Virus record (IMG/VR): IMGVR_UViG_3300018080_008436
Coordinates: 1-64,000 of that record
Reading direction: 5' to 3' (one strand)
DNA length: 64,000 bases
Every line of letters starts with the position of its first letter. The first letter of the stretch is position 1. Shown here piece after piece: positions 3,512 to 28,589 of this stretch. The position numbers and the translations under genes are program-made. Below the pieces are notes generated by a model that was not told where the DNA came from, did no database searches, and worked only from the letters and a program-made list of their open reading frames with translations.

Positions 3512-3535
3512 GGGTATCTCCTTCCGAAAAGAGTA

Positions 3536-3937
3536 CTACTGTTGTGAGTCTTCCCATTCGCGCCATTTTTTGAGGTACTCGCCAGTTTCGGCTCGAATCT
3601 CTTCGACCGTAATGTCGTACCCTTGCAAGGCGTTTACGGTATCCGTAATGTCAAGGGTAATACAAAACTCATGATTCGCCAGTTCTCGATGAATGATAGC
3701 CTTCTTGCCGTTCTCTTCCATGTCCTGAGCGATACCCGCTTTGTGGATCTTTTCCAATCCTTCAAAGAGTTGATCGGCGTTTTCCTTGGGGCAGAAAAGG
3801 CCGTTAATCATCCGAACATAGGTAACGCCCTCTTTTTGTCCTTCGTTGAATTGCTTAATGTTAAAGGCAAAGAACGCACCCATTTCCTTAAGAAGCTTCG
3901 ACTGGGGTTCTTCGATGTACTGGCTAAGATACTTCAT
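3536..3937 (-). CDS. hypothetical phage protein
   Basis: SD AGGAG; stop codon lies inside a repeat arm. Confidence 0.8.
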   Translation of the reverse strand: MKYLSQYIEEPQSKLLKEMGAFFAFNIKQFNEGQKEGVTYVRMINGLFCPKENADQLFEGLEKIHKAGIAQDMEENGKKAIIHRELANHEFCITLDITDTVNALQGYDITVEEIRAETGEYLKKWREWEDSQQ

Positions 3938-3986
3938 CGTTTTCTCCTTTTGAAAAGAGTACTACTGTTGTGAGTTTTTCCATGTT

Positions 3987-4148
3987 TTACCCCAAGTTAT
4001 AGTTATCGGGATTCGGCGGATTTTCAACGTCTCCGGTTGCATAGGCCAACAACTCGACAATGTATTCTTGATTGTCGTCGGCGGTTGTTATTCCGATCTC
4101 TCGGAACTGGAAAAGGACTTGAGCGACTTTTGCTAGGAATTGGTTCAT
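3987..4148 (-). CDS. hypothetical protein
   Basis: SD and promoter upstream. Confidence 0.65.
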   Translation of the reverse strand: MNQFLAKVAQVLFQFREIGITTADDNQEYIVELLAYATGDVENPPNPDNYNLG

Positions 4149-4359
4149 TGTCTTATCTCCTTTGTCTACTTCTAACATAGCTCAAGATAGTGAAAAGTCA
4201 AACCGGTCTCCCGAGTTTTTTCATCTTTCAAAAAGAGTACTACTGTTTCACTTCAGCAGTACTCTTTTCAGAAGGAGGAGAGGGGGAGGGGGGGCAATAA
4301 AAAACCCCCTGCTCAGAAGAACAGGGGGCGGGCTTGGGGGACGCTTGGCGCGTCTTGGG

Positions 4360-4875
4360 TTAGGTAATGGGTTCGGGGGCCATTTCCTCTTCGACTTCGT
4401 CAGCCGTTACGGTATGGAGTTTGCGCAGGTATTCTACGCGAACATTGAAGGTCAAATGACCCTCTTTTGGGGGCCGTTTCTCAGAGGCGATCATTGTATG
4501 CTCGTAGTTCTCTTTGGGGACTTCTTGACCGTTGAGGAAGTATTGCGTTACGGTCTTGACGTTGTCGAAGGTTCCCGACTCCAAACGAACGGCGAGAGTA
4601 CCCGATTTGAGATGCCGTAAGGTCGTCGGATAGTTGACCCATTCATAACCTTTCAGACCTGCATTCTCGGCGGGGAGAGAGCCGTCAACGCGACCATGCT
4701 TGACTTCAAGAATGTTGTCGTACTTGACCGCGATCCGACAGAGCATGAGCGTCCGTTTCGTCAACGGCAGACCCGTATATGCTTTCTTGACCTTGACGGG
4801 GCGTTCCCATTCGACCATGATATTTGCGCCGTTGGGGATGACTTTCAAAGCTTCGTTGAACTGTTCGATTTTCAT
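4360..4875 (-). CDS. hypothetical protein
   Basis: Own promoter and terminator. Confidence 0.8.
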   Translation of the reverse strand: MKIEQFNEALKVIPNGANIMVEWERPVKVKKAYTGLPLTKRTLMLCRIAVKYDNILEVKHGRVDGSLPAENAGLKGYEWVNYPTTLRHLKSGTLAVRLESGTFDNVKTVTQYFLNGQEVPKENYEHTMIASEKRPPKEGHLTFNVRVEYLRKLHTVTADEVEEEMAPEPIT

Positions 4876-5223
4876 TGTTGTTACCCTTTGTTTTGTTGTT
4901 CCCTTGGTAGCCCTTTTGCTGATACCCCTACAGTAGCATCTCTAAAGAGGAAGTCAAGCGCAGTTGTGCGATTTTTTTATTTTCAAAAACAATACTCCTG
5001 TTTCTGTTCAGCAGTACTCTTTTTGAAAACCAGGTGGTTTTCCGCCAGAAAAAAATCGAGAAAAAATTCGAAAAAAATCGGAAATTCTGTCACAGCCGTT
5101 CTGGAGTTATTTCTAAAAAGAGTACTACTGTTTCACTTCAGCAGTAGTCTTTTTGGAATAGCCTCCAGATACCACAAAAAAAGCCCCCGTCCGAAGACGA
5201 GGGCCAGGGCCAGGGGCCAGGGG

Positions 5224-5382
5224 TTAGTTGTTCTTCAAGGCGTTAAGCTTCTTCATTGCGTCAGCGCAGACCTGCTTGTCCTCTGCGGTTGGCTCTTCAA
5301 GACGACCTGCTTTCATGTCTTGCAAGACCTCTTCAGCAATCGCTTCGGGGTTGACGGCGTCGATGAATTCCTGTTCAGTCAT
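5224..5382 (-). CDS. hypothetical protein
   Basis: SD GGGAG, own promoter and terminator. Confidence 0.7.
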   Translation of the reverse strand: MTEQEFIDAVNPEAIAEEVLQDMKAGRLEEPTAEDKQVCADAMKKLNALKNN

Positions 5383-5838
5383 GTTTCTGCTCCCTTGATT
5401 TGTTAGACTGTACTGATAAGATAGCATCTCTGCCTGGGATGTCAAGTCAGATTTCCAAGTAAAATTTTTTGTACTAGCATAAGAAATCTTATGGCTTCGA
5501 GCTACCCCCGCATCCCTTTCAAAAACAGTACTCCTGATTTGATTGAGCAGTACTCTTTTTGTAAGCCAGGTTCAGGCGGAAGGCGATCTGCGGGACAGAA
5601 AAAAGCAAAAAAATCGGAAATCCCTGTCACAGCCGTTCTGGGGCTATTTCTAAAAAGAGTACTACTGTTTCACTTCAGCAGTAGTCTTTTTGTAATCCAG
5701 GTGCTGGAAGGCGAGGGCTTCGGTCAAAGTCATCTGGGAACAAAAAAAGCCCTCGACCAAACGGGGCCGAGGGCTTGACGACGAGGGGAGAATAACCTCG
5801 TCAGCAGAACGGAAGTAGAGAAGAAATGAACAAAGACC

Positions 5839-6120
5839 CTACTTCCGTTTGGAGTCAGCTTTAGGAGGCTTCTGGGGCAACGGAAGCCGAACGGAACATG
5901 CAAGAGCATTAAATGCTTCTCGCGCCGTAAGAGGCTTCATAGGGGTTACAGGAGCGTTGACATAATTTGTTGTTGCTCGTTGATAGAGATTAGTATGCAT
6001 GAGAAGGGGTTCGTTGACATGGTCTTGCCAGTTTGTCATTTCTTGGATCTCCTTGGTTACTGGTCCTACTATGACATAGGTTTGGAAGATGTCAAATCGA
6101 TCTGGGAGATTTTTCTTCAT
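5839..6120 (-). CDS. hypothetical protein (no clear SD; abuts 38-bp site)
   Basis: ORF followed by terminator. Confidence 0.35.
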   Translation of the reverse strand: MKKNLPDRFDIFQTYVIVGPVTKEIQEMTNWQDHVNEPLLMHTNLYQRATTNYVNAPVTPMKPLTAREAFNALACSVRLPLPQKPPKADSKRK

Positions 6121-6496
6121 TTAAAAAGAGTACTCCTAATTTTATTCAGCAGTACTCTTTTTGAAAGCCAGATGCGGGGAAGCCAGATCCGCCAGATTCA
6201 GATGAGGCTGATCTTTCTGTCATGCGCATACATCATTCAGTGGGTAGAGGCGATCCAGGATCGAGTAAGTGTTTTCAAAAAGAGTACTTCTGTTTTAATT
6301 GAGTAGTACTCTTATTGTACGAACTCGCTATCCAGATAGGCTGACCTTCATAAGATTTCTTATATAAATACAAAAATATTTGTCTTTTGCTGTCACGCCT
6401 TCCAGCGGCTCATTTCTAAAAAGAATACTACTGTTTTGATTCAGCAGTACTCTTTTTGGAATCCAGGTGGCACTCGAAGGCTTCGCGGGAACACTA

Positions 6497-6660
6497 AAAA
6501 ACCCCCGATGGGAGGTCGGGGGTTTGTGAGCGGGAGGGTGGACCGCTCTTAGGGCCGAGACGGGTGAGGGTAATCAAGGGGTGGGGAAGCCCGTCTCTAG
6601 GGTTGTCGCATTGCGCGACTGTTGAATTATGTTACCAGTTCATTGCTTGCTCCTTTGTTA
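6497..6660 (-). ncRNA. candidate small RNA / minigene (Met-Asn-Trp-stop) transcription unit
   Basis: Promoter 6666-6693, SD AAGGAG, ATGAACTGGTAA at 6643-6632, three hairpins, terminator. Confidence 0.5.
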
Positions 6661-6712
6661 CTATCAACATAGCATGTTTAGTTTGATTGTCAAATCGTTC
6701 TAGGAAATTTTC

Positions 6713-7438
6713 TTATGCGCATGATAAGTCAAGCTGATATTCCTCGGGTACGTCATCATCACATTCAGTGGGTAGCTGATCCTCAAACCATTTACCAAAC
6801 TTATCAACATGACAGAGCTTGTTTTTGTTCTGGCTTTTGTAGCTCCAGTTACAACCGTTGATGATGTAACCATTACAGTTGAGGTACATTTCTCCTTCGC
6901 TAATACCCCAGTCGTCCAATTCGATTTCTGGGATACAAACCTTTCGGTCTCCCCCATAACCATGTTCTTCTGCAAGACCTTCAATAATGGGTTCGTAGTA
7001 ATATGATTCATGGCTATGCTTCCGACTAAAGAACGTCAAGCCGTCAAGGAGTTCTGTGTCATACATTCCCTCTCCTGCATGAAACTGATCGTTGGATACA
7101 TTGACAGAGCATGAGTCTTTTTCGATACAGTAGTTATACCATTGGAGGCAAGCCACTACGAATTCCTCTGTGATTTTCGCGCCGTTGGTTGCGATGTAGA
7201 AAGAGCCTACATCGACATTATTCTGCCGACAACGAATCAAGGTTTCTTTAATGGCCTTGACATTCAAAGAGGGTTCGCCCCCAGTAAATGTGATTGTACC
7301 GATTGAGGAAACTTGATCGATCAAACTATGGATGTGTTTGATATCGATGGTTTTGTTTTGGGCTTTACCCCGAAGACAGTGGGAACATTGGAACTGACAG
7401 CGTCGGGTAACTTCGATCATCAAATCTCTAACATACAT
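6713..7438 (-). CDS. radical SAM protein
   Basis: CQFQCSHC (CxxxCxxC), TGGEP, ATNG. Confidence 0.9.
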   Translation of the reverse strand: MYVRDLMIEVTRRCQFQCSHCLRGKAQNKTIDIKHIHSLIDQVSSIGTITFTGGEPSLNVKAIKETLIRCRQNNVDVGSFYIATNGAKITEEFVVACLQWYNYCIEKDSCSVNVSNDQFHAGEGMYDTELLDGLTFFSRKHSHESYYYEPIIEGLAEEHGYGGDRKVCIPEIELDDWGISEGEMYLNCNGYIINGCNWSYKSQNKNKLCHVDKFGKWFEDQLPTECDDDVPEEYQLDLSCA

Positions 7439-7675
7439 TGTAGTATCTCCCTTTTTGATTACTTCAACATAGCACAGGTTTTGATGTTGTCAAGTTGAGT
7501 TCTTAGATTTTCTTCACATATGCAGGCGCATTCAGTGGGTAGGTGATGTGCATTCAGTGGGTAGTTCTAGAAAGAGTACTACTAATTTGATTGAGTAGTA
7601 GTCTTTTTGGAAGAGCCTCCAGACACCACAAAAAAAGCCCTCATCCGAAGACGAGGGCGTTAGAGGATTGGTTGT

Positions 7676-7825
7676 TTATGAGAACATATGATACAGATCC
7701 ACGATTTGTTTACGTTTCTTTTGTGGCATGTTATCCCAACAAAGACCAGCATGTTCACGATTCTCTTTGATTCCACCTTTTGCTTGTAGGTAGATGATTG
7801 CTGTGATTCCTTCTTCTCTATCCAT
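7676..7825 (-). CDS. hypothetical protein
   Basis: SD AGGAG. Confidence 0.6.
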   Translation of the reverse strand: MDREEGITAIIYLQAKGGIKENREHAGLCWDNMPQKKRKQIVDLYHMFS

Positions 7826-7851
7826 TGTGATCTCCTGCGCTTTTAAAAAGA

Positions 7852-8277
7852 CTACTCCTGTTTTTGTTTTGGTTTCTTGGCCCACTCGCCAAACTTAGGG
7901 TAATTGATCTTTGGCACTTCTCCATGCCACTCGATTGTTTTGATTCCGTCTTTGAGTTTATAGAACTCTCCAACTATAAAAGGAAATTGAAAATGTTCTT
8001 CATCTCCTTTTTTGCAATATCCTTGATGATGAGGAAGCCACACTAAACGATCTTCCTCAACGGAGTTGAATGCCCATGGTCCAGTATCAGTGACATAGGA
8101 CAACAAGGCTTGTACTCCTTCACCGACAAAGCCCAACATCCCATCTTCATTCCGAACAAGATAATAGTCTTTGATTCGGAATTGATCGTGAGAACATTGC
8201 ACAGGACAAAGAAGTTTCTTTCCAAAGTATTTGTCTGGGAAAGTTTTCTTATAATAACAATGTTTTCGGACTATCAT
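7852..8277 (-). CDS. hypothetical protein
   Basis: ATGA overlap; stop inside repeat arm. Confidence 0.7.
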   Translation of the reverse strand: MIVRKHCYYKKTFPDKYFGKKLLCPVQCSHDQFRIKDYYLVRNEDGMLGFVGEGVQALLSYVTDTGPWAFNSVEEDRLVWLPHHQGYCKKGDEEHFQFPFIVGEFYKLKDGIKTIEWHGEVPKINYPKFGEWAKKPKQKQE

Positions 8278-8687
8278 TTCATCCCCTTGAGCACACATTC
8301 TTCTTTGAGAACTTTGTATGTTACAAATTCGTCTTGTTTTGGTTCTGGGATGGGTTCGTTGAACTCTTCCAACTCATATTGAAATTGTTCTAACTCATCG
8401 TCAGTCCAAGGGATGGTTTTGATTTGGGCAGTCATTTCAATCGTGAAATCCCAAACCTCTCCTTCGTTTTTGCCTTCCGCTTGTTTCAAAACAAACGCAC
8501 AGAAAACTGGAAAGTCCCAGGGGTTGTGAACTTCTTCCAACGTATCTTGAGTTATGGTCTCGCCATCATCGCTAATGGCTACTCGTGCTTTCCCTTTGAA
8601 GGTTCCCAGCTTCCGAAGATGACCCCACGTATCTTCCATTATTTTTGTTTTCTTGCCCATTGCGAAGGCATCAGCAACTACACCCAT
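8274..8687 (-). CDS. hypothetical protein
   Basis: SD GGGAG. Confidence 0.7.
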   Translation of the reverse strand: MGVVADAFAMGKKTKIMEDTWGHLRKLGTFKGKARVAISDDGETITQDTLEEVHNPWDFPVFCAFVLKQAEGKNEGEVWDFTIEMTAQIKTIPWTDDELEQFQYELEEFNEPIPEPKQDEFVTYKVLKEECVLKGMK

Positions 8688-8712
8688 CTTCTTCTCCCTT
8701 TCAAAAAGAGTA

Positions 8713-8946
8713 CTACTGATCTTTTGAGACTTTGACTGTTGTTGTAATTCCCGCCAACGCTCCACATGCTATGAGACCGAAGAGGATGTATTGAGAAAGT
8801 TGATCGGCAGAGATAAGAATTGCTTTAGCTATCTCGTCTTCATAGTTGACAGCTTGTTCAGTCAATGACGGATCAGAATCTCCACAGCCAGTCAAGATTC
8901 CCGCAAAGATAATTACAGCCAGGATGATAATCATATAGCGTTTCAT
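8713..8946 (-). CDS. putative membrane lipoprotein
   Basis: Hydrophobic signal with LTGC lipobox and C-terminal TM segment. Confidence 0.6.
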   Translation of the reverse strand: MKRYMIIILAVIIFAGILTGCGDSDPSLTEQAVNYEDEIAKAILISADQLSQYILFGLIACGALAGITTTVKVSKDQ

Positions 8947-9599
8947 TGTCTTTCTTCCTCTTGTTACTATCAACATAGCATAGATATGGTTGATGTCAAT
9001 CCTATTTAGAAAAAATAAATGAGATCGAGGAGGGTCTCCAGGATCGAGGAGGTATTTCTAAAAAGAGTACTACTGTTTTAATTCTGTAGTACTCTTTTTG
9101 AAAATCCTGGTGTGTATAATCACACTTCTTCACACCTCAAAATCAGGCTTATTATAATAGAATATAATATTATAATACAGAGAGATGAGCTTGATCTTAT
9201 ATAAAAAATAGAAAGAGAGTATATAGAAAGGTATCAAAACAATGGTATCAACACATTAGACACGTAAAGATACACGTGAAGATACACGTGGGCTATTATA
9301 CCAGCACGGGGTTTTCTAAAAAGAGTACTTCTGTTTTGATTGAGTAGTACTCTTTTTGAAAGGTCTGCTGGAACTCGAAGGCGCTTGGCGGGAATGAGAA
9401 ATAAAAAAGCCCTCTCGCAGATTGAGAGGGCTTTGCGCAGAGGAGGGAGGGGCCTCTGCATTGTGGAAAATTGAGGGCCTAAGGTCGGGCCTCAGGAGGG
9501 AGAGCGACCTCCCTAACTTTTCTTGCTAGTCGCTATTGCAATTCAGTCACCTCATTGATTGTTAAATACCTGCGTCCAGCTTCCCTCGGATCAGGAATT

Positions 9600-10055: not shown

Positions 10056-10282
10056 TTAAGATCTCCCATCTTGTTTATAGCATCAACATAGCATCTCTTG
10101 ATTCGATGTCAAATCGTTTTGTATGGAAATCTTCTCTTTTCTTGAGAACTTATGCATATACATGCCTGGGGGTATAGGCATTCAGTGGGTAGCCTGGGTG
10201 TATTCAGTGGGTAGTTTCAAAAAGAGTACTACTAATTTGATTGAGCAGTGGTCTTTTTGGAATGGGAGATCGAGACACTAGA

Positions 10283-10477: not shown

Positions 10478-10669
10478 GATACTTTCTCCGTTTGTTCTAC
10501 TTCTATCTTAACTCGTTACCAACTGTTGTCAACCTTATTCGCAAAAATACTGAAGAAAAAATGATGAGTTCCATCGGAAATCCAGGAGTGTCTGGATCTG
10601 GTATTATTTTCAAAAAGAGTACTACTGTTTTATTTCAGCAGTACTCTTTTCAGAAATAGACCTGGTGGT

Positions 10670-11678: not shown

Positions 11679-11901
11679 GCTACCACTATAACTTATCTAA
11701 ATAAGATGTCAAGTCGATTTACAAAAAATAAATGCGCATACTATGCGCAGGCATTCAGTGCGTAGCCTGGGTGCATTCAGTGGGTAGTTCTAGAAAGAGT
11801 ACTTCTGTTTTGATTGAGTAGTACTCTTATTGAAAGGAGAGAAGGCACTAAAAAACCCCAGCCATCTCTGACTGGGGTTGATCCTCACACGGTAGAGTGG
11901 T

Positions 11902-13831: not shown

Positions 13832-14101
13832 ATCAAATCTCCTGTTTGTTCCTGTTTCAGTTTATAAGTCACAATAGCATCTCTATTGGGGATGTCAAGC
13901 GCATTTAGAAAAAATAAATCCAGCTTGATGAACCTGGCTTCCCTGGGCCTGAACTAGTGTTTCAAAAAGAGTACTCCTGTTTTTATTCAGGAGTACTCTT
14001 TTTAGAAGATGGTCCAGAGGTCCCAGGTCCTGGCTTTCTGGGCACTAAAAAACCCCCCGCCTCGAAAGGCAGGGGGCTTGACTGGGATCTCCTATCGGAG
14101 A

Positions 14102-15025: not shown

Positions 15026-15473
15026 TTTGAAATGCTCCTTTGTTTGAGTTGGCTTTGAGGATTGTCCTCGATCTACCAGTTACGTTAGCATGTCTTTCGA
15101 TGTTGTCAAGTGCAATTTCGAGATTTTGTCAGCTTTTTTCGATCCTCCATTTTGTTCTCGGTTGTGCAGGTTCTTTGTTATCATGCGACTACTATGGCAC
15201 TCGAAACGGTACTTGTCAAGTGCGGTTCTCAAAAAAAGTTGAACTTTCTCATTTCAGGCACCCATTTCCCTATATACCTTATAATATACTGGCGATATGT
15301 GAGTCGAATTCGAAGACCTGGAAGACCTGGGACGGTGGCTTCTGGAGACCCTGAAAACCACTTTTCAAAAAGAGTACTACTGTTCTGATTCAGTAGTATT
15401 GTTTTTAGAAGGGGAAAAGGCACCAGGATACTTTGCGATACAAAGTACTTGGGATCTAAAACAGGTGGGGACT

Positions 15474-16191: not shown

Positions 16192-16511
16192 GATCCTCTC
16201 CTTTTGTTCTTTATATACCATAACATCATATGTATGTATTTCAAGTTGACTTAGTAAAATAACTTCCCAGGTGTCTGCCTTCCTGGAAGCATTTCTGAAA
16301 AGAGTACTTCTGTTTTTATTCAGTAGTACTCTTTTTAGAAGTAGCTGGCACCGGCGGCTGGTCCGCCAGGGCTATGAACTCATTGGGGAAAAAAGGAAAG
16401 CCCCTACCCAATTAAGGATAGAGGCTTTAACGACCCTGCCAAGGTTGAGATCGCAGGGGCCTGCGTAGGCAGGCATTCAAGGACGCGCATTCAGTGGATG
16501 CGCTCAGGCAT

Positions 16512-19088: not shown

Positions 19089-19356
19089 GGTACTGCTCCC
19101 TTGTTTATATAGTCACCTTAGCATATGTTAAATATATGTCAAGCCCATTTACAAAAAATAATTCAGACATCGATCAAAATCTCCTGAACAGCTCCTGGAC
19201 AGCGGCTCATCTTTCAAAAAGAGTACTACTGTTTTTATTCAGTAGTACTCTTTTTAGAAGTAGCTGGCACCCGGCGGCAGGCGGCGGGGCCTGAAAACAA
19301 AAAACCCCTGGCATTTCTACCAGGGGTTCTTCGGTATGGCTCGTTGCTTCGTTCGG

Positions 19357-19935
19357 TTATTGTTCTATTGTCACATACTTCTTCCAGTCATCATCGATGT
19401 TGAATCTGAATGCAACCAAATCAGTTGGATCAATTCCAAGGTTCCTGCATCTCTCAGCATAAAGAAACATTTTGATCTGACAGATAGCAACCCTTCTGTC
19501 TTTCCCATACTTGTAATATGGCAAACCTCTTTTGGTCCATCCATAGATACAAGTTCCAGTTCTCTCAAATTGTTTCCCTGCTTCAGTAGTTGTAACTGTA
19601 TTATGATTGATCCACACAATCCTATCGAAGTCTTCTTGTTTCAGATAGTGATTCCGACCAATCTTAATGACAATATCTGTCATCAAATGTTTGTTGCGAG
19701 AGGGAAGAAAGTTGCAACGATCTTTTCCACATTCTTCTGCCAACTCAGCAATCGTTCTCAGTTTGAGTTTGTCATATGCAATAGTGATATACTTCTTCGC
19801 CCATTCCTCAGGAATATAAACTCTTCCATTCTTTCGTTTGGAAGGACAATGTCCTGTTCGAACATGCATACGAACAGTATTCATTTTGACTTTGGTAAGT
19901 CTTCCGATATCAGCTATTGGTATCCACTTGCTCAT
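19357..19935 (-). CDS. MerR/excisionase-like HTH protein with tandem domains
   Basis: IADIGRLTKVKMNTVRMHVRTG..PS.RKNGRVYIP and two similar units. Confidence 0.65.
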   Translation of the reverse strand: MSKWIPIADIGRLTKVKMNTVRMHVRTGHCPSKRKNGRVYIPEEWAKKYITIAYDKLKLRTIAELAEECGKDRCNFLPSRNKHLMTDIVIKIGRNHYLKQEDFDRIVWINHNTVTTTEAGKQFERTGTCIYGWTKRGLPYYKYGKDRRVAICQIKMFLYAERCRNLGIDPTDLVAFRFNIDDDWKKYVTIEQ

Positions 19936-20075: not shown

Positions 20076-20152
20076 TGGTACGCCCGACAGGATTCGAACC
20101 TGTGACCTACGGATTAGAAGTCCGTTGCTCCATCCAACTGAGCTACGAGCGC
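20076..20152 (-). tRNA. tRNA-Arg(TCT)
   Basis: Full cloverleaf, ACGGA-CTTCTAA-TCCGT, CCA. Confidence 0.95.
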
Positions 20153-20158
20153 ATTACC

Positions 20159-20470: not shown

Positions 20471-20480
20471 TGGTCAACTC

Positions 20481-20864: not shown

Positions 20865-20875
20865 TGTTCTATCTC

Positions 20876-21205
20876 CTATCGTTCGATCTCGATGTCGCCG
20901 TTCCCCATGAGAACAGCATTCTTATTCACAATTTGCTTGAAGATTTCAAAACGCGCATTGTCGCTAAGCCAATGAACCGCATCCGTAATCTCATCAATGA
21001 CATCCTCTTTGGACAAGTAGATCTTCTCCCCATGAACAGGAATGACATCGGCGGTATTGATCTTCTTCTGGCAACCTGCGCAAACAAAAACAACTGGACC
21101 TTTATTCAACAAATGGCCTGCATTGATACCTGTCTGGAAACCACAATCGCATTCGATGACTTCCATCTCCGTATGCTTACCCTGAATGTTCTCAACCCTT
21201 TTCAT
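20876..21205 (-). CDS. hypothetical protein
   Basis: CDC/CAGC. Confidence 0.6.
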   Translation of the reverse strand: MKRVENIQGKHTEMEVIECDCGFQTGINAGHLLNKGPVVFVCAGCQKKINTADVIPVHGEKIYLSKEDVIDEITDAVHWLSDNARFEIFKQIVNKNAVLMGNGDIEIER

Positions 21206-21434
21206 TTTTGTCCTCAATTGATTTAAGAAATGATGCGTTGCAAGCATGACAAAATAAACCCAGATGAACCCCATGATCGCAACAGTCCGTCAGATCTTTC
21301 TCAGCGATCTCATTGCAGGCAGACTCAACAATGTCAAGGATTCGTTCAACGCATTGAGGGCTTACATTCTCAGCCAGTTCTACTCGGATAGCGTCTCTAG
21401 CTTCATCCTTGATTGTATCCAAATCTCGTTTCAT
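21192..21434 (-). CDS. hypothetical protein
   Basis: SD and promoter. Confidence 0.65.
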   Translation of the reverse strand: MKRDLDTIKDEARDAIRVELAENVSPQCVERILDIVESACNEIAEKDLTDCCDHGVHLGLFCHACNASFLKSIEDKNEKG

Positions 21435-21573
21435 TCTCTGTCTCCGCTTTTTGTTTATACCTCAACATAGCATACCAATACATGATGTCAAATGCATTTA
21501 GAAAAAATAATTCAAAAGGACTTGCAATGCTGTGAAGACATGCCATAGTATACCTAAACCAAAGGAGCATCTC

Positions 21574-21993
21574 ATGGTTAACAAAACATTCATCCTGGCA
21601 GGGAAAGCAATCTTTACCATCAACAATAATAAAGGAGAGCATTTGACTTTTCGAATCGATGGTAAGCCAGACCGCAACAACCCTAATGCTAAGGTCTACT
21701 TCGCTAAGGTTCTGACTGGACCTGATAATCTCTCCAACTATACGTATATGGGTCTCCTTCGTCAAAAGGATCTGCGGCTCATCCTTACTAAGAACTCTCG
21801 ATTTACGAAAGAATGTCGTAGCATTCGCGTCTTCTGTTGGGCCATGCAAATCATCAATGGAACCACCAAACTTCCTGAAGGGTATGCGATCAAACATGCT
21901 GGTCGCTGTTGTCGATGCGCCAAACTGTTGACAGATCCTGAATCCATTGAAGTCGGTATCGGTCCTGAATGTCGGAAACGCATGGGTCTTTAA
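21574..21993 (+). CDS. DUF6011-like Zn-finger protein
   Basis: CCRCAKLLTDPESIEVGIGPEC; SD AAGGAG; terminator 22013-22046. Confidence 0.8.
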   Translation: MVNKTFILAGKAIFTINNNKGEHLTFRIDGKPDRNNPNAKVYFAKVLTGPDNLSNYTYMGLLRQKDLRLILTKNSRFTKECRSIRVFCWAMQIINGTTKLPEGYAIKHAGRCCRCAKLLTDPESIEVGIGPECRKRMGL

Positions 21994-22211
21994 TCTCTCT
22001 CCTCCTTAGTCGCCCCCTACTGAGCAATCGGTAGGGGGTTTTCTTTTGCCTGGACCTTTCCTGGACAGCGGCTCGCCTTTCAAAAAGAGTACTACTGTTT
22101 TAATTCTGTAGTACTCTTTTTAGAAGAGATAGGGCACACCAGGCTACCCATCAGGGCACAAAAAAAGCCCCTACCGAAGTAGGGGCCAGGGAATAAACAC
22201 GAGGAGATGGT

Positions 22212-22400
22212 TTATTTCCCTAACATATCTGCAACTGGGGCCTTAGTATTGCGAGTTTCGATCTCCTTTTCCTCATCGGTTCCGACTCGAACCTTGAGAA
22301 CCTTGAACCATTTGTCGCTTGGGATGTCTTCAGGAGTTTTGATCAACAGAGTTCGAGTGCTATTCTCGAATTGAATGAAGATTGGGAAGTACGATTTCAT
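22212..22400 (-). CDS. hypothetical protein
   Basis: ATGA overlap. Confidence 0.55.
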   Translation of the reverse strand: MKSYFPIFIQFENSTRTLLIKTPEDIPSDKWFKVLKVRVGTDEEKEIETRNTKAPVADMLGK

Positions 22401-22579
22401 GGTAAAAATCTTCCTGTTACAATTTCTTTTAAGAATATAAAACACCAACTCATCATTCCAAAAATGAAGATAAGACCTGTAGCATCTTCATTACCTCCCC
22501 AGATCCACAAAAGGAATAAACCCCAGAAGAGTGCAATTAGTACTCGTTGGTTTAATGAAAATTCCTTCCAGAAAATCAT
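22397..22579 (-). CDS. small membrane protein
   Basis: Two TM segments. Confidence 0.55.
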   Translation of the reverse strand: MIFWKEFSLNQRVLIALFWGLFLLWIWGGNEDATGLIFIFGMMSWCFIFLKEIVTGRFLP

Positions 22580-22582
22580 TTG

Positions 22583-22906
22583 TCAAATCTCTTTGTATGT
22601 TCCTTTAAATGTCTCTGGATCAAATATAGTCGCTAAACCCTCTTTGTCAATCAGAACTACAGAATTTATTTCAGTTCTTGCGGTTCCCAGATCTACCACA
22701 GGATCATCGACAGTAAATTGTCTTGCTTCAACAATATACTCTTCTTGAGTCAATGCTGTGCATTTATACTTCTTCCAACCAGAAAGTTTCTTGGCTTCTT
22801 CGAGATTGATAACCTTGGGTTTCTCTATCTTGAATTCTTCGCCTTCATCTTGCTGTGGTACTTCAACTGGTTTTCTTTTGAATAATCGTTTAAAAAATCC
22901 CATCAT
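22583..22906 (-). CDS. hypothetical protein
   Basis: SD AAGGAG. Confidence 0.7.
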   Translation of the reverse strand: MMGFFKRLFKRKPVEVPQQDEGEEFKIEKPKVINLEEAKKLSGWKKYKCTALTQEEYIVEARQFTVDDPVVDLGTARTEINSVVLIDKEGLATIFDPETFKGTYKEI

Positions 22907-22919
22907 TATCTCCTTTAAT

Positions 22920-22996
22920 TGGTGGGCCATGTAGGACTTGAACCTACGACCTGTCGATTATGAGTCGAATGCTCTGACCAACTGAGCTAATGGCCC
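22920..22996 (-). tRNA. tRNA-CAT (probably Ile2; elongator Met possible)
   Basis: Cloverleaf, GACTCATAATC anticodon arm, CCA. Confidence 0.9.
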
Positions 22997-23007
22997 TTTG
23001 CAATTTC

Positions 23008-23253
23008 TTAAGATGGAGAGTAAGATCCAAGGGGTCTTCTCACCTTGTTCCTTTCAATTCTCCACTTCTCTTGTTTCTCGAAATCTTCTTCAAAAGTGAA
23101 GCTAACAAAAGTAGCTGTGACATTCCCCCCACTTGCAATACGATAGATCAAACCATTGGGAACTCGCATAACGCTTGTTCTATCAGAGACTGTTCGAACT
23201 TCATGAAGTTCCATTGATCGAAGATCTTCATAGTTGTTAGCTTCATCATTCAT
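23008..23253 (-). CDS. hypothetical protein
   Basis: ORF in operon. Confidence 0.6.
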   Translation of the reverse strand: MNDEANNYEDLRSMELHEVRTVSDRTSVMRVPNGLIYRIASGGNVTATFVSFTFEEDFEKQEKWRIERNKVRRPLGSYSPS

Positions 23254-23476
23254 TTTTCTTTCTTCCTTTTAGCATTACTTCACAATCTTCTCGATCTGGA
23301 CAACCGTAACGACAGTACATATCTCTTAAGATTGGTCCGAACTCTTCATTGAAACTCATCAAGGCTTCTTCATCATTTTGAATGCCTCGATACCACTTAT
23401 GTTTTTCGAGATGACTTTTAATAACATCGATCTCTGCTTTTGTTAAATCGCCTACTCGCGTACAATGCTTGTGCAT
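23246..23476 (-). CDS. hypothetical protein
   Basis: ORF in operon. Confidence 0.65.
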   Translation of the reverse strand: MHKHCTRVGDLTKAEIDVIKSHLEKHKWYRGIQNDEEALMSFNEEFGPILRDMYCRYGCPDREDCEVMLKGRKKNE

Positions 23477-23699
23477 TACTGTACCCCCTAAATGACATAC
23501 TCATTATACATTCCGTGCATGTCATTCGGTTTCCTCCCTTGAAACATTTTTCCTTTTACGAACCCATGACAAGAACATATAAATGATAATCATTGTCATG
23601 GTTGAGAAAATATAGCCCCAGACCAATCCCCTCAAATAGAAGTACATCGGATCTGGATTATTCCAATCAGTTAATAACATTTTCTTTCTCCTGTTAAAT

Positions 23700-23896
23700 T
23701 GGCAGGCTGGGTTGGATTCGAACCAACGTCCCTTCGTATACTACTCTCCGCTTTCCTGTCTAGCCTCAACAGTACATATCACTTTGAGTGACTCCAGATG
23801 TTTCATTTGACTTTTGGAACTAACCGCGTATCAGTTCCTACTAACAGACTACTTTATCCTTCTGTCTAACGATGCTCTCCTATGAGCTACCAGCCC
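23700..23896 (-). ncRNA. tRNA-like RNA with ~120-nt structured insert in place of anticodon loop
   Basis: GGGCTGG/CCAGCCT acceptor, GCTC/GAGC D arm, GTTGG-TTCGAAT-CCAAC T arm, GCCA end. Confidence 0.75.
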
Positions 23897-23904
23897 GTTA
23901 AATT

Positions 23905-24108
23905 TTACTCGACCTCTTCGATTGTGATCTTAAATTTCTTTCCGACAGGTTGTTTCGCCAACCACTCATCAAATTTGTCAAGCTCCACGTGAGCCTCTTC
24001 AGTTATCGAAGGAGAACAAAGCAACAGAAGGGTTGCGTTATATCTTTCAAGAACGTCAGGACACTCCTCTTGATTGTACTCGACATGTGCTTCGGTTTCA
24101 AATTTCAT
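23905..24108 (-). CDS. hypothetical protein
   Basis: SD AGGAG. Confidence 0.6.
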   Translation of the reverse strand: MKFETEAHVEYNQEECPDVLERYNATLLLLCSPSITEEAHVELDKFDEWLAKQPVGKKFKITIEEVE

Positions 24109-24123
24109 CGCCTTTCTCCTATT

Positions 24124-24209
24124 TGGTAGCTAGGGGGGGACTCGAACCCCCAATCCCAAAGGGCGGTTGATTTTAAGTCAACTGCGTATACCAATTCCGC
24201 CACCTAGCC
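24124..24209 (-). tRNA. tRNA-Leu(TAA)
   Basis: Cloverleaf with variable arm, GTTGA-CTTAAAA-TCAAC, CCA. Confidence 0.95.
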
Positions 24210-24215
24210 ATAAAA

Positions 24216-24911: not shown

Positions 24912-24917
24912 AAAAGA

Positions 24918-25017: not shown

Positions 25018-25022
25018 AAAAT

Positions 25023-25262: not shown

Positions 25263-25272
25263 GTCTATCTCC

Positions 25273-25590: not shown

Positions 25591-25868
25591 TGTTATGCTC
25601 CAGTATCTTTACTAATCAACATAACCCCCATTAACATTAAGTCAAGGCCATTTACAAAAAATAATAACCCGCTGTCGATCCAGGAGCCGCCGCCATCTTC
25701 TAAAAAGAGTACTACTGTTTTTATTCTGTAGTACTCTTTTTGAAAATCAGGACCCCAGCCGCCACACCAGCAGACCCTGATCGGACCTGAACAACAAAAA
25801 AGACCCCTACCAATTAAGGTAGAGGCCCATATGCCTATATGTACGAGATAAGCAACTATATTATACAA

Positions 25869-26621: not shown

Positions 26622-26838
26622 CTAAGTATTTCTCTTTTTGTTCCTGAAACCAAGGACCATATAAATCCCCAAGAGCATGCCACTCTTCAAGATTCAATTC
26701 TTTAATCCTGTCTCTAACATCCGAAGACTTCTTGAACCATTTATTCAGAAACTCCTGGTTTGTTTTCATCTCAGGTTGTTTCAAAGCTAAAATGACATCT
26801 TTCATGTCCTCAAATAATTGTTTTACTTTCTCATTCAC
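26599..26838 (-). CDS. hypothetical protein
   Basis: ORF in operon. Confidence 0.6.
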   Translation of the reverse strand: MNEKVKQLFEDMKDVILALKQPEMKTNQEFLNKWFKKSSDVRDRIKELNLEEWHALGDLYGPWFQEQKEKYLDENPDPF

Positions 26839-27273
26839 ATATGCCCCCAGGCATTCAGTGCATAGTTTGCATAGCCTGCACCAATTCAGGTTAAGAATGT
26901 GCTTGCATTCGCAGACCCATTCAGTGGATGGTTACATCGTAGCTACTCTCTTATGACAATGTGGACATTTGACAATTCGAGTCTTTCGATGGTAGGCTTC
27001 CTCTGCCGCTCGTTTCAGGTTATAACGTTTCCGACAATGACGACACGTAAAATATGTGTTAAGGTCAATTGGTCTTGGCATTTTTGTTCTTTCATTGAAT
27101 GTTCCTGTCTCTCCCTTTATTATATCGCATAATTGAAGGATGTCAATCCCCTAAGGAATCTCAATCCTCCTGGAGTATGTCGCGATTATTATACTTCTTG
27201 CGGCCTGCCTTCTGAGCCTTGAACTTCCGACGCTTGTCACGAGTGTAAGGGTCCTGCTTCTTGCGATGTCTTT

Positions 27274-27609
27274 TCATATGATACCTCCTGCATCTTGTTG
27301 TAGTTTGTTCAACAGATATTCTTCACCACCCTGGTCCTTGAACATTTGATCATGCAACTTATAACGAAGACCACGAGTCTCAGTCTCTAACCGCTTGGTC
27401 AAACCTTCCCAGGACTTCATCGCCAAATCCAAACACTCTGAAGGAACATGAAAACCTTCTTGCTCCTGTGCAATGGTCTCAGATTCAACTGACATATAGA
27501 AGCTGGCCAAAGCTTCTGCAACATCATAAGCAGTTGTCTGCATATAAATATCACCATCAGCCTCTTCCAACATCTTGTCCAACTGATCATTAATTTGTTG
27601 TGGAGTCAT
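27274..27609 (-). CDS. hypothetical protein
   Basis: ORF in operon. Confidence 0.65.
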   Translation of the reverse strand: MTPQQINDQLDKMLEEADGDIYMQTTAYDVAEALASFYMSVESETIAQEQEGFHVPSECLDLAMKSWEGLTKRLETETRGLRYKLHDQMFKDQGGEEYLLNKLQQDAGGII

Positions 27610-27778
27610 CTTTCTTTCCTTCTCTCAGTTCTTTCCAGAATTTCCGCAAATCACTCAGGCTACCAATCTCAAGTATCGAGAGTGTTAAAGCAAAAAAGGA
27701 TATGAAGAGCATCACGATGATGAAAGTAATCAATATCATGATAACTACAGGAAAGAAAATGTTAAGCATGAAATTCAT
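27590..27778 (-). CDS. small membrane protein
   Basis: Hydrophobic N-terminus; SD. Confidence 0.6.
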   Translation of the reverse strand: MNFMLNIFFPVVIMILITFIIVMLFISFFALTLSILEIGSLSDLRKFWKELREGKKDDSTTN

Positions 27779-27875
27779 CCGATCTCTCCTCGTTCTCTTT
27801 TGTCCTCATACTCAGCTTGCTTAGCAAGTCCAGGCAAAGCTGGTATCAGGTAGATTAACATAATGATGAATCTGA

Positions 27876-28082
27876 TCATTCCCACTCCTTATGATCGCCA
27901 AATTCCATCGCATCTTCATAGCCTTGACGGTACTCAGCAATTTCTTCTTCTGTCATTTCTTCTTCACCAATCCGCAGACCATGATAGGTGCCTTCTGGAT
28001 ACCAATGAGGTTTCTGGCCCCTTCTATAATAAGCGTCTGCTCTTCCTCTATCATAAGGGCTACCATGTTTTACCTGATTCAT
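27876..28082 (-). CDS. hypothetical phage protein
   Basis: HGSPYDRGRADAYYRR motif; SD GGAGG. Confidence 0.75.
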   Translation of the reverse strand: MNQVKHGSPYDRGRADAYYRRGQKPHWYPEGTYHGLRIGEEEMTEEEIAEYRQGYEDAMEFGDHKEWE

Positions 28083-28112
28083 CGCCGCCTCCTAGTCCTT
28101 TCAAAAAGAGTA

Positions 28113-28589
28113 CTACTGATCCTCTTCAGGATCTTCGGGATTCAAATGCTTGAACTCCTCAACCATATCCCGTTTCCAGAGCAATTCAACATCATGAACC
28201 TTACCATCATTCATGTTAATCTGAATATAGTTGGGAAAGATCTTGAGATCCTGAATATCAAACTTGCAGATCTCAAACTCTTCGTCACAAGAGGAAATGA
28301 CCAAATCATCTCGAATGATCTCCCCCTCAGTAACATCAACAAACAAAGACATACCATCGGCAATGATAGCTTCACAATCCCGAACCATATCAAAGAACAA
28401 ATCGATATGTTTATTATATCGATGCTCGATCTCAGTGGTATACTGGACATCATCAGCCTTTACGTCTGAGAAATTTGTATTGGCCGCTTTGAACTCTGCC
28501 TTTGATCGAGCATCCTCATCACTATCAGCTTCAACATCGACAATGATGGTCTTGGCTTCGATTCGACTAACTCTAACTCGGAAATTCAT
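28113..28589 (-). CDS. hypothetical protein
   Basis: Stop inside repeat arm. Confidence 0.7.
   Translation of the reverse strand: MNFRVRVSRIEAKTIIVDVEADSDEDARSKAEFKAANTNFSDVKADDVQYTTEIEHRYNKHIDLFFDMVRDCEAIIADGMSLFVDVTEGEIIRDDLVISSCDEEFEICKFDIQDLKIFPNYIQINMNDGKVHDVELLWKRDMVEEFKHLNPEDPEEDQ

What the first reader, a model, noticed from the sequence alone, without database searches (positions are those of the whole stretch)
3527..28118. Single arms of the 38-bp element supply gene stop codons and lead into the next RBS
Seen: lone arms at 3527, 8704 and 28104 read CAG-TAG-TACTCTTTT on the coding strand and give the Gln-stop of ORFs ending at 3536, 8713 and 28113; the arm at 7846 gives CAG-GAG-TAG for the ORF ending at 7852. 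Each is followed within about 30 nt by the SD and ATG of the next gene. The arm at 3953 also sits just before an SD and shares 23 bp with 3527. It is always the same arm, with coding sequence replacing the spacer and other arm. Inference: hybrid attL/attR-like scars of genes captured at the element, or intra-operon binding sites.
Basis: partly seen in the sequence, partly recalled or inferred. Interest (0 to 1): 0.75.

Follow-up and report, generated by a model that had tools for sequence, protein, structure and literature searches.

The report
Half-palindromes at phage operon gene junctions
In the early-gene region of a half-megabase phage, a few single halves of a repeated 48-bp palindrome sit between neighbouring genes and supply the upstream gene's stop codon; they look like seams left by rearrangements at a regulatory repeat, and this remains unproven.

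Summary
Whole single arms (CAGTAGTACTCTTTT on the coding strand) lie at 3527, 3953, 7846, 8704 and 28104. Four give the TAG of real ORFs, and each is followed 15-21 nt later by an ATG preceded by an SD.

The parent element is a sharply bounded ~48-bp palindrome. It has 22 full copies, all within 1.8-30.5 kb of a ~0.5-Mb phage genome. It sits between a GC-rich terminator and a sigma70-type promoter, in an ORFan-rich early region.

The arms vary independently, with no covariation and no G.U bias. They therefore behave as sequence-specific DNA units, not as an RNA hairpin.

Every rearranged copy keeps a whole arm and is broken at an edge of, or within, the 8-bp spacer. For the one gene with close homologs (DUF7659), family similarity runs to the arm boundary. 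That gene is flanked by 32-nt direct repeats containing its own 3' end.

No tyrosine or serine recombinase and no Y1 transposase is encoded, and no reciprocal 5'-arm hybrids exist. An att-like mechanism is therefore unsupported.

Best reading: PeSL-like regulatory cassettes, with lone arms as recombination seams that may keep half-site function. The built-in TAG is used opportunistically. No diverged relatives exist to test this.

The parts
3527..3541 (-). Lone arm, 15/15. Its CAG-TAG (3541-3536) ends ORF 3536-3937. SD AAGGAG lies at 3523-3518 and the next ATG at 3511.
3953..3967 (-). Lone arm, 15/15. It is not used as a stop, because the upstream ORF ends at TAA 3987-3989 in another frame. 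SD lies at 3949-3944 and the ATG of the DUF7659 gene at 3937.
7846..7860 (-). Lone arm with 2 mismatches (CAGGAGTAGTCTTTT). CAG-GAG-TAG ends ORF 7852-8298. The upstream 8 nt, AACAAAAA, resemble the spacer. The next ATG is at 7825.
8704..8718 (-). Lone arm, 15/15, with outer flank TGAAAGG. GAT-CAG-TAG ends ORF 8713-8976. The next ATG is at 8687.
28104..28118 (-). Lone arm, 15/15, with outer flank TGAAAGG. GAT-CAG-TAG ends ORF 28113-28589. The next ATG is at 28082. It shares 25 nt with the junction at 8704.
1818..1832 (+). Lone arm of a flipped copy (spacer AATAAAAA plus CAGTAGTACTCTTTT on the + strand). The other arm is replaced by AT-rich sequence. It lies after the terminator of gene 1945-2499.
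3196..3263 (-). Split element: two arms (3249-3263 and 3196-3210) separated by 38 nt instead of 8. The insert is GATC-rich and palindromic.
3526..3557 (-). Right copy of the 32-nt direct repeat: the last 16 coding nt of the DUF7659 gene (W-E-D-S-Q), then the arm, then C.
3952..3983 (-). Left copy of the 32-nt direct repeat (30/32). Here the 16 coding-derived nt are non-coding and out of frame.
3536..3937 (-). DUF7659 gene, 133 aa. It ends REWEDSQQ*, and the family motif W-E-E-x-Q-E aligns to its last residues.
3350..3511 (-). 53-aa ORF with weak zinc-ribbon matches, downstream of lone arm 3527. It is in frame with the TAG of the DUF7659 gene.
3987..4148 (-). Small ORF (53-63 aa) upstream of lone arm 3953, with no family match.
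7852..8298 (-). 148-aa ORFan whose stop lies in arm 7846.
7676..7825 (-). 49-aa ORF downstream of lone arm 7846.
8713..8976 (-). 87-aa ORF whose stop lies in arm 8704.
8274..8687 (-). 137-aa ORF downstream of lone arm 8704.
28113..28589 (-). 158-aa ORF whose stop lies in arm 28104. It has only remote homologs (E 3e-8), which end about 10 residues earlier.
27876..28082 (-). 68-aa ORF downstream of lone arm 28104.
4231..4268 (-). Full 38-bp element.
4986..5023 (-). Full element, second of the pair with 5116.
5116..5153 (-). Full element.
5522..5559 (-). Full element, second of the pair with 5653.
5653..5690 (-). Full element.
6124..6161 (-). Full element.
6278..6315 (-). Full element.
6419..6456 (-). 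Full element.
7570..7607 (-). Full element.
9061..9098 (-). Full element.
9319..9356 (-). Full element.
10220..10257 (-). Full element with a degenerate 5' arm.
10613..10650 (-). Full element.
11793..11830 (-). Full element.
13965..14002 (-). Full element.
15368..15405 (-). Full element.
16298..16335 (-). Full element.
19217..19254 (-). Full element, the only copy with both arms perfect. It lies just after the terminator of the HTH_17 gene.
22083..22120 (-). Full element, lying between convergent terminators.
25703..25740 (-). Full element.
30303..30340 (+). Full element with the spacer flipped.
30431..30468 (+). Full element with the spacer flipped.
19357..19935 (-). 192-aa HTH_17/MerR-like protein. 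It is the only recognisable DNA-binding protein among 69 early-region ORFs and is a candidate binder only.

Best explanation
The 38-bp element is the core of a sharply bounded ~48-bp palindrome (TTnCA-AAAAGAGTACTnCTG-AATnAAAA-CAGnAGTACTCTTTT-TnnAA). It is the most conserved part of about 22 regulatory cassettes, each ordered GC-rich terminator, palindrome, then UP-like tract plus TTGACA-N16-(TG)TATGTT promoter. These cassettes punctuate a 29-kb, ORFan-rich, mosaic early region of a ~0.5-Mb phage. No RNA polymerase gene was detected, the promoters are sigma70-type, and four sigma-family genes are present, so I infer transcription by the host RNA polymerase.

Each arm behaves as an independent, sequence-specific double-stranded DNA unit. 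I infer that it is a half-site for a regulatory protein and not half of an RNA hairpin.

The lone arms are whole single units left at seams. Rearrangements broke the palindrome at an edge of, or within, its 8-bp spacer and joined the 3' arm to the 3' end of an upstream gene. Terminator, 5' arm and usually the spacer were lost, and a transcription-unit boundary became an intercistronic junction. These rearrangements were probably homologous or microhomology-mediated recombination among the repeats, as proposed for T4-type PeSL cassettes. Palindrome-centred breakage is an alternative.

The arm's built-in TAG is used because it is the first clean in-frame stop, and the outer flank TGAAAGG merges into the next gene's SD. 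So the stop-codon role is opportunistic.

Shown: the anatomy, the restricted distribution, the independent variation of the arms, the breakpoint positions, the end of DUF7659 homology at the arm, and the direct repeats. Inferred: protein binding, the recombination mechanism, and whether lone arms still act.
For: - Cassette anatomy comes from the sequence and from the promoter and terminator scans. Strong sigma70-type promoters are concentrated in 0-30 kb on the minus strand.
- Information content is high from -4 to +43 of the element and falls to background outside. In contrast, the neighbouring terminators differ in sequence from cassette to cassette.
- There is no covariation: 89.0% of cells are paired against 88.9% in shuffles. 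Mismatches comprise 15 G.U-type, 12 A.C-type and 34 transversions.
- Self-comparison shows that only the 60-190-bp intergenic cassettes repeat; the genes between them are unique. Only a handful of 69 early-region ORFs match any Pfam family at E<=0.001 (10 family hits), and gene GC ranges from 33 to 60%.
- All rearranged copies keep a whole arm. There are no truncated arms and no 5'-arm remnants.
- Lone-arm junctions have 24-49-nt gaps, whereas most other operon junctions overlap or have gaps of 0-12 nt.
- DUF7659 homology runs to the arm, and 32-nt direct repeats flank that gene.
- The lone arm at genome position 146,924 has lost its 5' side but keeps the downstream promoter. It looks like an intermediate form.
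- For the PeSL precedent, see PMC2839356 and PMC4122927.
Against: - Each in-operon junction needs two breakpoints: the 5' side, and the promoter between arm and SD. No intermediate lacking only the promoter was found.
- Six of seven lone arms are perfect 15-mers, against 9 of 20 3' arms in full copies. That fits continued function, or very recent origin, better than a passive scar.
- No protein is shown to bind the element.
- All available assemblies are >=99.98% identical, and no other phage carries the element. Neither recombination at the cassettes nor selection on lone arms could therefore be observed.
- The conserved, polar spacer is not needed by a simple symmetric operator.
Confidence: 0.45

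Rival explanations
1. Stoperator-like half-operators. The lone arms are maintained binding sites for the same protein that binds the full palindromes. Placed in one orientation just upstream of an SD inside operons, they would block or pause elongating RNA polymerase, or occlude the start region, to shut off distal early genes.
For: - All 5 in-operon lone arms have the same orientation relative to transcription, lie in short intercistronic gaps and overlap stop codons.
- This is the layout described for L5-type stoperators (PMC9283540).
- Six of seven lone arms are perfect 15-mers, although the flanks of the 3527/3953 pair differ at 7 of 33 positions.
- The arms vary independently.
- An HTH_17 protein is encoded next to the only perfect palindrome.
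Against: - There are only about 3 independent origins, so the orientation and perfection statistics are weak (p about 0.03-0.1).
- Only three operons carry lone arms.
- No integrase was found by the PF00589 search, and no repressor family was specifically searched for.
Confidence: 0.22
2. Site-specific recombination sites. The element would be a lox/FRT-like core site with 15-bp inverted arms around an 8-bp polar spacer. The early region would then be a cassette array, and the lone arms would be hybrid sites from recombination with secondary sites at gene ends.
For: - The geometry fits: 15-8-15 with a conserved asymmetric spacer, and 20 of 22 copies in one orientation.
- Every rearranged copy is broken at an edge of, or within, the spacer.
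- Unique small genes lie between the sites.
- The DUF7659 gene is flanked by direct repeats.
Against: - No tyrosine recombinase, serine recombinase or Y1 transposase was found in the 476-kb record. Of the ~48 kb trimmed from the record, only ~6.5 kb (the part within L002) was fetched; that part has no arm and no integrase-type Pfam hit on its called genes, and the whole 524-kb contig could not be searched.
- Spacers fall into several classes.
- Reciprocal 5'-arm hybrids are absent.
- The left repeat of DUF7659 includes 16 nt of the gene's own coding end, which points to duplication and not to a site-specific crossover.
- Each cassette has its own promoter and terminator, unlike integron cassettes.
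Confidence: 0.1
3. RNA-level role. The full element would be a hairpin in read-through transcripts, acting as a back-up bidirectional terminator or an RNase III site. In a lone arm, the CUCUUUU end would pair with the downstream SD, or the arm's UAG would be a conditional stop read by the phage's tRNA(CUA).
For: - Full copies fold at -25 to -26 kcal/mol with z about -7 to -8.
- In 4 of 5 lone-arm junctions the MFE structure pairs CUCUU(U) with the SD.
- The genome encodes a tRNA with anticodon CUA.
- Read-through at 3527 would run in frame into the next ORF.
Against: - There is no covariation and no wobble bias.
- Most cassettes already have a GC-rich terminator upstream of the element.
- The SD accessibility of the five genes ranks at the 15th-67th percentile, so it is not extreme.
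- Folds of the lone-arm junctions are no better than shuffles.
- There is no sign of genome-wide TAG recoding or of back-up stops after TAG.
- Three of four arm TAGs are followed by a second in-frame stop 2-3 codons later.
Confidence: 0.1
4. Coincidence. The lone arms would be chance 15-mers or meaningless debris, and the stop-codon use would be accidental.
For: Use of the TAG frame is only modestly significant once duplicate junctions are collapsed (p about 0.01-0.04).
Against: Only 0.18 arm matches are expected by chance in 64 kb, and 50 are seen. Five exact 15-mers lie in 357 nt of short intercistronic gaps, and the genome outside the region holds only one copy.
Confidence: 0.02

Closest known systems
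PeSL (promoter-early stem-loop) regulatory cassettes of T4-type phages (Arbiol et al. 2010, PMC2839356; Comeau et al. 2014, PMC4122927)
   Same: Both are repeated composite terminator plus sigma70-like early-promoter cassettes with an AT-rich upstream tract. Both are concentrated in a hyperplastic, ORFan-rich region. In both, only the cassettes repeat while the genes between them are unique, and no dedicated recombinase is encoded. Some genes are flanked by repeats, and sometimes only one cassette remains beside an ORF.
   Different: Here the most conserved part is an extra ~48-bp palindrome, distinct from the GC-rich terminator. Whole single arms occur inside operons and overlap stop codons. 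Mini-circles and indels between relatives could not be tested. The phage is a ~0.5-Mb metagenomic genome and is not shown to be T4-like.
Stoperators of cluster A mycobacteriophages (L5 gp71-type repressor sites; PMC9283540)
   Same: Both are short conserved sites in short intergenic gaps. Both keep one orientation relative to transcription and coexist with related sites at promoters.
   Different: Stoperators are asymmetric 13-mers bound by a monomeric immunity repressor. They are spread over the whole genome of temperate phages. Here the unit is half of a palindrome, with only 6-7 lone copies almost all in one 29-kb region. No repressor or integrase is recognised, and binding is untested.
Tyrosine-recombinase core sites (loxP/FRT type) and integron attC arrays (from general knowledge)
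   Same: Both have inverted arms around an 8-bp asymmetric spacer and form arrays in one orientation between small genes. Rearranged copies here are broken at the spacer edges.
   Different: No recombinase gene was found, the spacers are not uniform, and there are no reciprocal hybrid sites. The cassettes here carry their own promoters and terminators.
Start-associated sequences (SAS/ESAS) of cluster K mycobacteriophages (recalled from Pope et al. 2011; not checked here)
   Same: Both are conserved short sequences placed immediately upstream of the start codons and SD of a subset of genes, sometimes with inverted-repeat companions.
   Different: SAS includes the RBS itself and has no stop-codon role. 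This comparison rests on memory only.

Membership tests
PeSL-type regulatory cassettes | Repeated composite of a stem-loop terminator and a sigma70-like early promoter with an AT-rich upstream tract | tested here: met
   A GC-rich hairpin plus T-run, then the palindrome, then ttattttttgtaaat-TTGACA-N16-(TG)TATGTT, is seen in most of the cassettes. Some (for example 15368, 10220 and the second elements of pairs) lack their own GC-rich terminator, and 22083 lacks a downstream promoter.
PeSL-type regulatory cassettes | Location in a hyperplastic region of non-conserved small genes | tested here: met
   Ten Pfam families are hit by a handful of the 69 ORFs. Two of the three ORFs searched are ORFans. 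Gene GC is heterogeneous, and only the cassettes repeat.
PeSL-type regulatory cassettes | Recombination between cassettes produces indels between relatives, or mini-circles | not testable with these tools
   All assemblies are >=99.98% identical. Logan contigs simply break at the repeats. No other phage carries the element.
Stoperator (L5-type) | Sites in short intergenic gaps in one orientation relative to transcription | tested here: met
   Five of 5 in-operon lone arms meet this, but they represent only about 3 independent origins.
Stoperator (L5-type) | More than 20 asymmetric sites distributed across the genome of a temperate phage that has an immunity repressor and an integrase | tested here: not met
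   There are 6-7 lone arms, all but one within 29 kb. No integrase was found.
Stoperator (L5-type) | Repressor binding that blocks elongation in an orientation-dependent way | not testable with these tools
lox/FRT/attC-type recombination site | Inverted-repeat arms flanking a 6-8-bp asymmetric spacer | tested here: met
   The element has 15-bp arms and an 8-bp spacer, AATnAAAA, conserved and polar.
lox/FRT/attC-type recombination site | A cognate tyrosine or serine recombinase is encoded | tested here: not met
   PF00589 and PF00239 gave no match in the 476 kb. The 524-kb contig could not be searched.
lox/FRT/attC-type recombination site | Reciprocal hybrid sites, one of each arm type, flank the captured DNA | tested here: not met
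   By spacer orientation, only 3'-arm lone copies exist. There are no 5'-arm remnants.
REP/BIME or IS200/IS605-type hairpin elements | An associated Y1 (HUH) transposase or RAYT | tested here: not met
   PF01797 gave no match.
Structured RNA hairpin (terminator or RNase III site) | Base pairs maintained by compensatory or wobble changes in the transcribed strand | tested here: not met
   Observed pairing equals the shuffle control. G.U-type and A.C-type mismatches number 15 and 12, with 34 transversions. No Rfam family matched.
Gammaproteobacterial LexA (SOS) box, TACTG-(TA)5-CAGTA (recalled) | CTG and CAG separated by 10 bp | tested here: not met
   The element reads TACTG-N8-CAGTA, so the spacing is 8 and not 10. 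This is a resemblance only.

The most novel reading that the evidence does not exclude
The ~48-bp palindrome is a lox/FRT-like crossover site (15-bp arms, 8-bp polar spacer) for an unrecognised phage or host recombinase. The 29-kb early region of this half-megabase phage would then be a self-contained gene-cassette array. The lone arms would be products of recombination with secondary sites at gene ends, which is consistent with every rearranged copy being cut at an edge of, or within, the spacer.
Probability: 0.1. Interest if true: 0.8.

Novelty: new variant of a known kind. Interest (0 to 1): 0.4.

Why it matters
Huge phages carry large blocks of small genes of unknown function, and how such blocks are assembled and regulated is poorly understood.

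This locus gives an unusually clean picture. About 22 near-identical terminator-palindrome-promoter cassettes are present, together with a handful of half-palindromes that mark where transcription units appear to have been fused.

If the arms are protein-binding units, they define a regulon for the phage's immediate-early genes and offer a simple synthetic test system. If they are recombination seams or crossover sites, they show how ORFan genes such as DUF7659 are moved between phages.

The stop-codon use itself is a side effect of compaction. It mainly matters for annotation: these 3' ends are real.

Tried and rejected
1. Read laying on 3101-9100 with three DNA metagenomes. The sequence is identical in all three and the contigs break at the repeats. 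The reported joints are cross-mapping of other copies, so nothing was learned about variants or circles.
2. Searches for relatives carrying the element: megablast against phages, exact-pattern scans of viral contigs and of metagenome contigs. Only this phage's own contigs carry it; single hits elsewhere are unrelated.
3. RNA-structure support: no covariation, no wobble bias and no Rfam family.
4. SD sequestration by the arm. It appears in MFE folds, but junction folds are no better than shuffles, and SD accessibility is unremarkable against 338 genes.
5. Degenerate second arms further upstream and truncated arms: none found.
6. Mobile-element enzymes: tyrosine recombinase, serine recombinase and Y1 transposase are all absent. 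Searching the longer 524-kb contig was not possible.
7. Homolog tests for ORFs 28113-28589 and 7852-8298. They are ORFans, or have only remote homologs with non-comparable tails.
8. Candidate binder, the HTH_17 protein 19357-19935. The complex prediction was not run by the tool and no relatives exist in viral contigs.
9. Amber recoding as an explanation for CAG-TAG. A tRNA(CUA) exists, but no genome-wide TAG recoding or back-up-stop signal was found.
10. LexA-box and IHF-site resemblances. The spacing, or the consensus, is not met when read directly.

Full report
**Setting**

The window is the first 64 kb of a 476,248-bp single-contig virus record with 39% GC. The record comes from sediment and seawater metagenomes. 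Two independent assemblies give contigs of 524,692 and 523,871 bp that are >=99.98% identical over the shared part and extend past window position 1. The record is labelled a trimmed 'provirus', so the window start is an artificial boundary.

Standard code 11 fits the genome. It has about 59 tRNAs and a tmRNA and four sigma70-family genes. No RNA polymerase beta subunit was detected; a T7-type polymerase search also found nothing, but its controls did not ring, so that absence is not established. I infer that the host polymerase transcribes it.

The arm AAAAGAGTACTACTG at <=2 mismatches occurs 50 times in the window, against 0.18 expected. In the whole record it is confined to 1.8-30.5 kb, apart from one lone copy at 146,924. 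The ~6.5 kb fetched beyond the trim point (part of the ~48 kb cut from the record) contain no further arm.

There are 22 full copies (arm, 8 nt, arm), one split copy at 3196-3263 with 38 nt between its arms, and lone arms at 3527, 3953, 7846, 8704, 28104 and 1818.

Genes in this region run on the minus strand. Read on that strand, the lone arms are CAGTAGTACTCTTTT. ORFs 3536-3937, 8713-8976 and 28113-28589 end CAG-TAG inside the arm, and ORF 7852-8298 ends CAG-GAG-TAG. Gene calls made by others on the sister assemblies place the stops of the three ORFs they cover (all but 28113-28589) at the same positions.

The next ATG follows 15-21 nt after the arm, with a good SD between them.

There are two corrections to the finding:
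- The arm at 3953 does not terminate an ORF. The upstream ORF ends at a TAA 22 nt earlier, in another frame.
- 3527/3953 and 8704/28104 are pairs of copies, sharing a 32-nt core (30/32) and 25 nt respectively. Only about three origins are therefore independent. In-frame use of the TAG has p about 0.01-0.04, and the 'always the same arm' bias is not significant by itself.

**What the parent element is**

Twenty-two copies were aligned with their flanks. Information content is high from position -4 to +43 and drops to background outside. The element is thus a ~48-bp unit: TTnCA, a 15-nt arm, the spacer AATnAAAA, a 15-nt arm, then TnnAA. The spacer is conserved and asymmetric.

In most of the cassettes the order on the coding strand is:
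1. gene stop;
2. a GC-rich hairpin with a T-run, whose sequence differs from cassette to cassette;
3. 30-40 nt;
4. the palindrome;
5. 28-80 nt;
6. an AT-rich tract and a TTGACA-N16-(TG)TATGTT promoter;
7. SD and ATG.

Exceptions exist. Some copies, such as 15368, 10220 and the second elements of pairs, have no GC-rich terminator of their own, and 22083 lies between convergent terminators with no downstream promoter.

Five cassettes carry two palindromes 128-154 bp apart. Strong sigma70-type promoters are several-fold denser in 0-30 kb than elsewhere.

Self-comparison shows that only these 60-190-bp cassettes repeat, while the genes between them are unique. Only a handful of 69 ORFs match any Pfam family at E<=0.001 (10 family hits). 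Gene GC ranges from 33 to 60%, with a region mean of 43% against 39% for the genome. This is the picture of a hyperplastic early region.

**DNA unit or RNA hairpin?**

Full copies would fold well as RNA, at -25 to -26 kcal/mol. But the arms change independently:
- 89.0% of cells pair, against 88.9% after shuffling partners among copies.
- Mismatches comprise 15 G.U-type, 12 A.C-type and 34 transversions, so there is no strand-specific wobble preference.

Most cassettes already have their own terminator upstream. The uniform palindrome, set beside diverse terminators and random flanks, argues for sequence-specific recognition of double-stranded DNA. Each arm appears to be a unit of its own, and the AGTACT cores are 22 bp apart.

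Which protein binds is unknown. The only recognisable DNA-binding protein in the region is a 192-aa HTH_17/MerR-like protein at 19357-19935. Its terminator is followed by the one perfect palindrome. That is a lead only, and the complex predictor did not run the protein-plus-DNA job.

**What the lone arms are**

- They are truly lone. No 5'-arm remnant better than background lies within 300 nt upstream.
- They are always whole. No truncated arms exist in the region.
- In every rearranged copy, similarity to the element stops at an edge of, or within, the 8-bp spacer. This holds for the five in-operon arms, the copy at 146,924, the flipped copy at 1818 and the split copy.
- Their outer flank (TGAAAGG at 8704, 28104 and 146,924) is still the palindrome's own flank, and it runs directly into the SD.
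- Lone-arm junctions have gaps of 24-49 nt, whereas most other operon junctions in the region overlap or have gaps of 0-12 nt. They therefore look like seams and not co-evolved junctions.
- Two operons carry two lone arms each, and a third carries one.

ORF 3536-3937 is a DUF7659 protein with more than 350 homologs. Two fetched examples lie in unrelated 50-60-kb phage contigs.

In the alignment, the family motif W-E-E-x-Q-E matches the window's W-E-D-S-Q-Q-stop. The nearest homologs (59-63% identity) then continue for 1-13 more residues. Two members (P0018, P0024) stop at the same column. The DNA of two homologs shows the conserved GAATGGGAAG and no arm.

So coding similarity runs through the 'spacer' position to the arm boundary, and the variable tail is replaced by the arm's CAG-TAG. 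The resulting C-terminus is still within the family's natural range.

The gene is also bracketed by 32-nt direct repeats. The left copy contains 16 nt of the gene's own coding end, now non-coding and out of frame. This is a duplication or recombination footprint and is not expected from a site-specific crossover.

The other arm-terminated ORFs gave no usable comparison.

**Mechanism**

I favour the following (confidence about 0.45). The region is built from PeSL-like regulatory cassettes (PMC2839356, PMC4122927) whose core palindrome is a protein-binding site. Lone arms are seams where recombination among these repeats, or breakage at the centre of the palindrome, joined a 3' arm to the end of an upstream gene and removed terminator, 5' arm and spacer. 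The copy at 146,924 has lost its 5' side but keeps its downstream promoter, so it looks like an intermediate.

The TAG is used because, of the three frames through the arm, only that one ends the protein cleanly before the next RBS. One other frame runs into the next gene, and the third overlaps its start.

The weak points are these:
- A second breakpoint is needed to remove the promoter, and no intermediate lacking only the promoter was found.
- Six of seven lone arms are perfect, which hints at retained function.

This leads to the stoperator-like rival (0.22; PMC9283540), which is compatible with a seam origin.

The lox/att-like rival (0.10) fits the geometry and the spacer-edge breakpoints. 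It lacks any recombinase and any reciprocal hybrid site.

The RNA-level rival (0.10) is weakened by the covariation results. It is also weakened by unremarkable SD accessibility, which ranks at the 15th-67th percentile of 338 genes.

**A side issue bearing on the stops**

The genome encodes a tRNA with anticodon CUA. If it is active, three of the four arm TAGs are backed by a second in-frame stop 2-3 codons later (TTT-TGA or TTT-TAA). At 3527 the frame runs in phase into the zinc-ribbon-like ORF. I found no sign of general TAG recoding or of back-up stops after TAG, so I treat this as a curiosity.

**Limits**

All available copies of this phage are nearly identical, and no other phage carries the element. 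Neither selection on the lone arms nor recombination at the cassettes could be observed, and no RNA data could be laid. The verdict on function is therefore an inference from anatomy.

**Verdict**

The 'capture scar' idea is partly supported, in a recombination-seam form without an att mechanism. The stop-codon supply is an opportunistic consequence. The system is a new variant of known repeated regulatory cassettes, of moderate interest.

Noticed in passing
genome 409748-409822 (outside the window; locus L032:449-523, minus strand): A well-formed tRNA with anticodon CUA, the amber-suppressor type (Rfam tRNA, 62 bits). It is one of about 59 tRNAs, alongside a tmRNA. No genome-wide TAG recoding or back-up-stop signal was found.
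   Followed up: partly
window 6233-31686, e.g. 7528-7564, 10178-10214, 11751-11787: A second repeat family, CTACCCACTGAATGC. It has 13 copies, all on the minus strand, against 1.25 expected. The clearest copies are pairs 22 nt apart, immediately downstream of elements 7570, 10220 and 11793. It may be another operator.
   Followed up: no
window 3196-3263: A split copy of the palindrome. Its arms are separated by 38 nt instead of 8, and the insert is GATC-rich and itself palindromic (GATCAAGATCTTGATC). The breakpoint again lies at the boundary of spacer and arm.
   Followed up: partly
window 19357-19935 (minus strand): A 192-aa HTH_17/MerR/excisionase-like protein. It is the only recognisable DNA-binding protein among 69 early-region ORFs, and its terminator is followed by the one perfect palindrome (19217). 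No relatives were found in viral contigs.
   Followed up: partly
window position 1 and loci L001/L002: The 476-kb record is a 'provirus'-trimmed piece of contigs of about 524 kb that were assembled twice independently. The window starts at the trim point, and genes continue beyond it, for example a PAP2 protein.
   Followed up: partly
genome 73.1, 73.9, 133.4 and 163.8 kb (loci L026-L029): Four sigma70-family genes are present, and no RNA polymerase beta subunit was detected (the T7-type polymerase search was uninformative, as its controls did not ring). This suggests a temporal programme driven by sigma replacement on the host polymerase.
   Followed up: no
whole genome, minus strand: Thirty-two pairs of open segments of >=100 codons are separated by a single in-frame TAA, against 3 for TAG and 2 for TGA. 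With TAA read as sense, the longest open frame grows from 2641 to 4370 codons. This may be only gene packing, but it is unexplained.
   Followed up: no
window 34018-34068: A 51-bp near-perfect palindrome (24-nt arms, 3-nt centre), unrelated to the 38-bp element and apparently inside an ORF.
   Followed up: no
window 20076-24209: Three tRNA genes (Arg-TCT, Met-CAT, Leu-TAA) are embedded among the early-region cassettes.
   Followed up: no
window 45334-47364 (minus strand): A 676-aa protein with AAA+ domains and a Peptidase_M41 domain, so it is FtsH-like.
   Followed up: no
window 4986-5153, 5522-5690, 6124-6456, 30303-30468: Palindromes occur in pairs or triplets 128-154 bp apart. Two of these roughly 190-bp double-element modules are 81% identical to each other.
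   Followed up: partly
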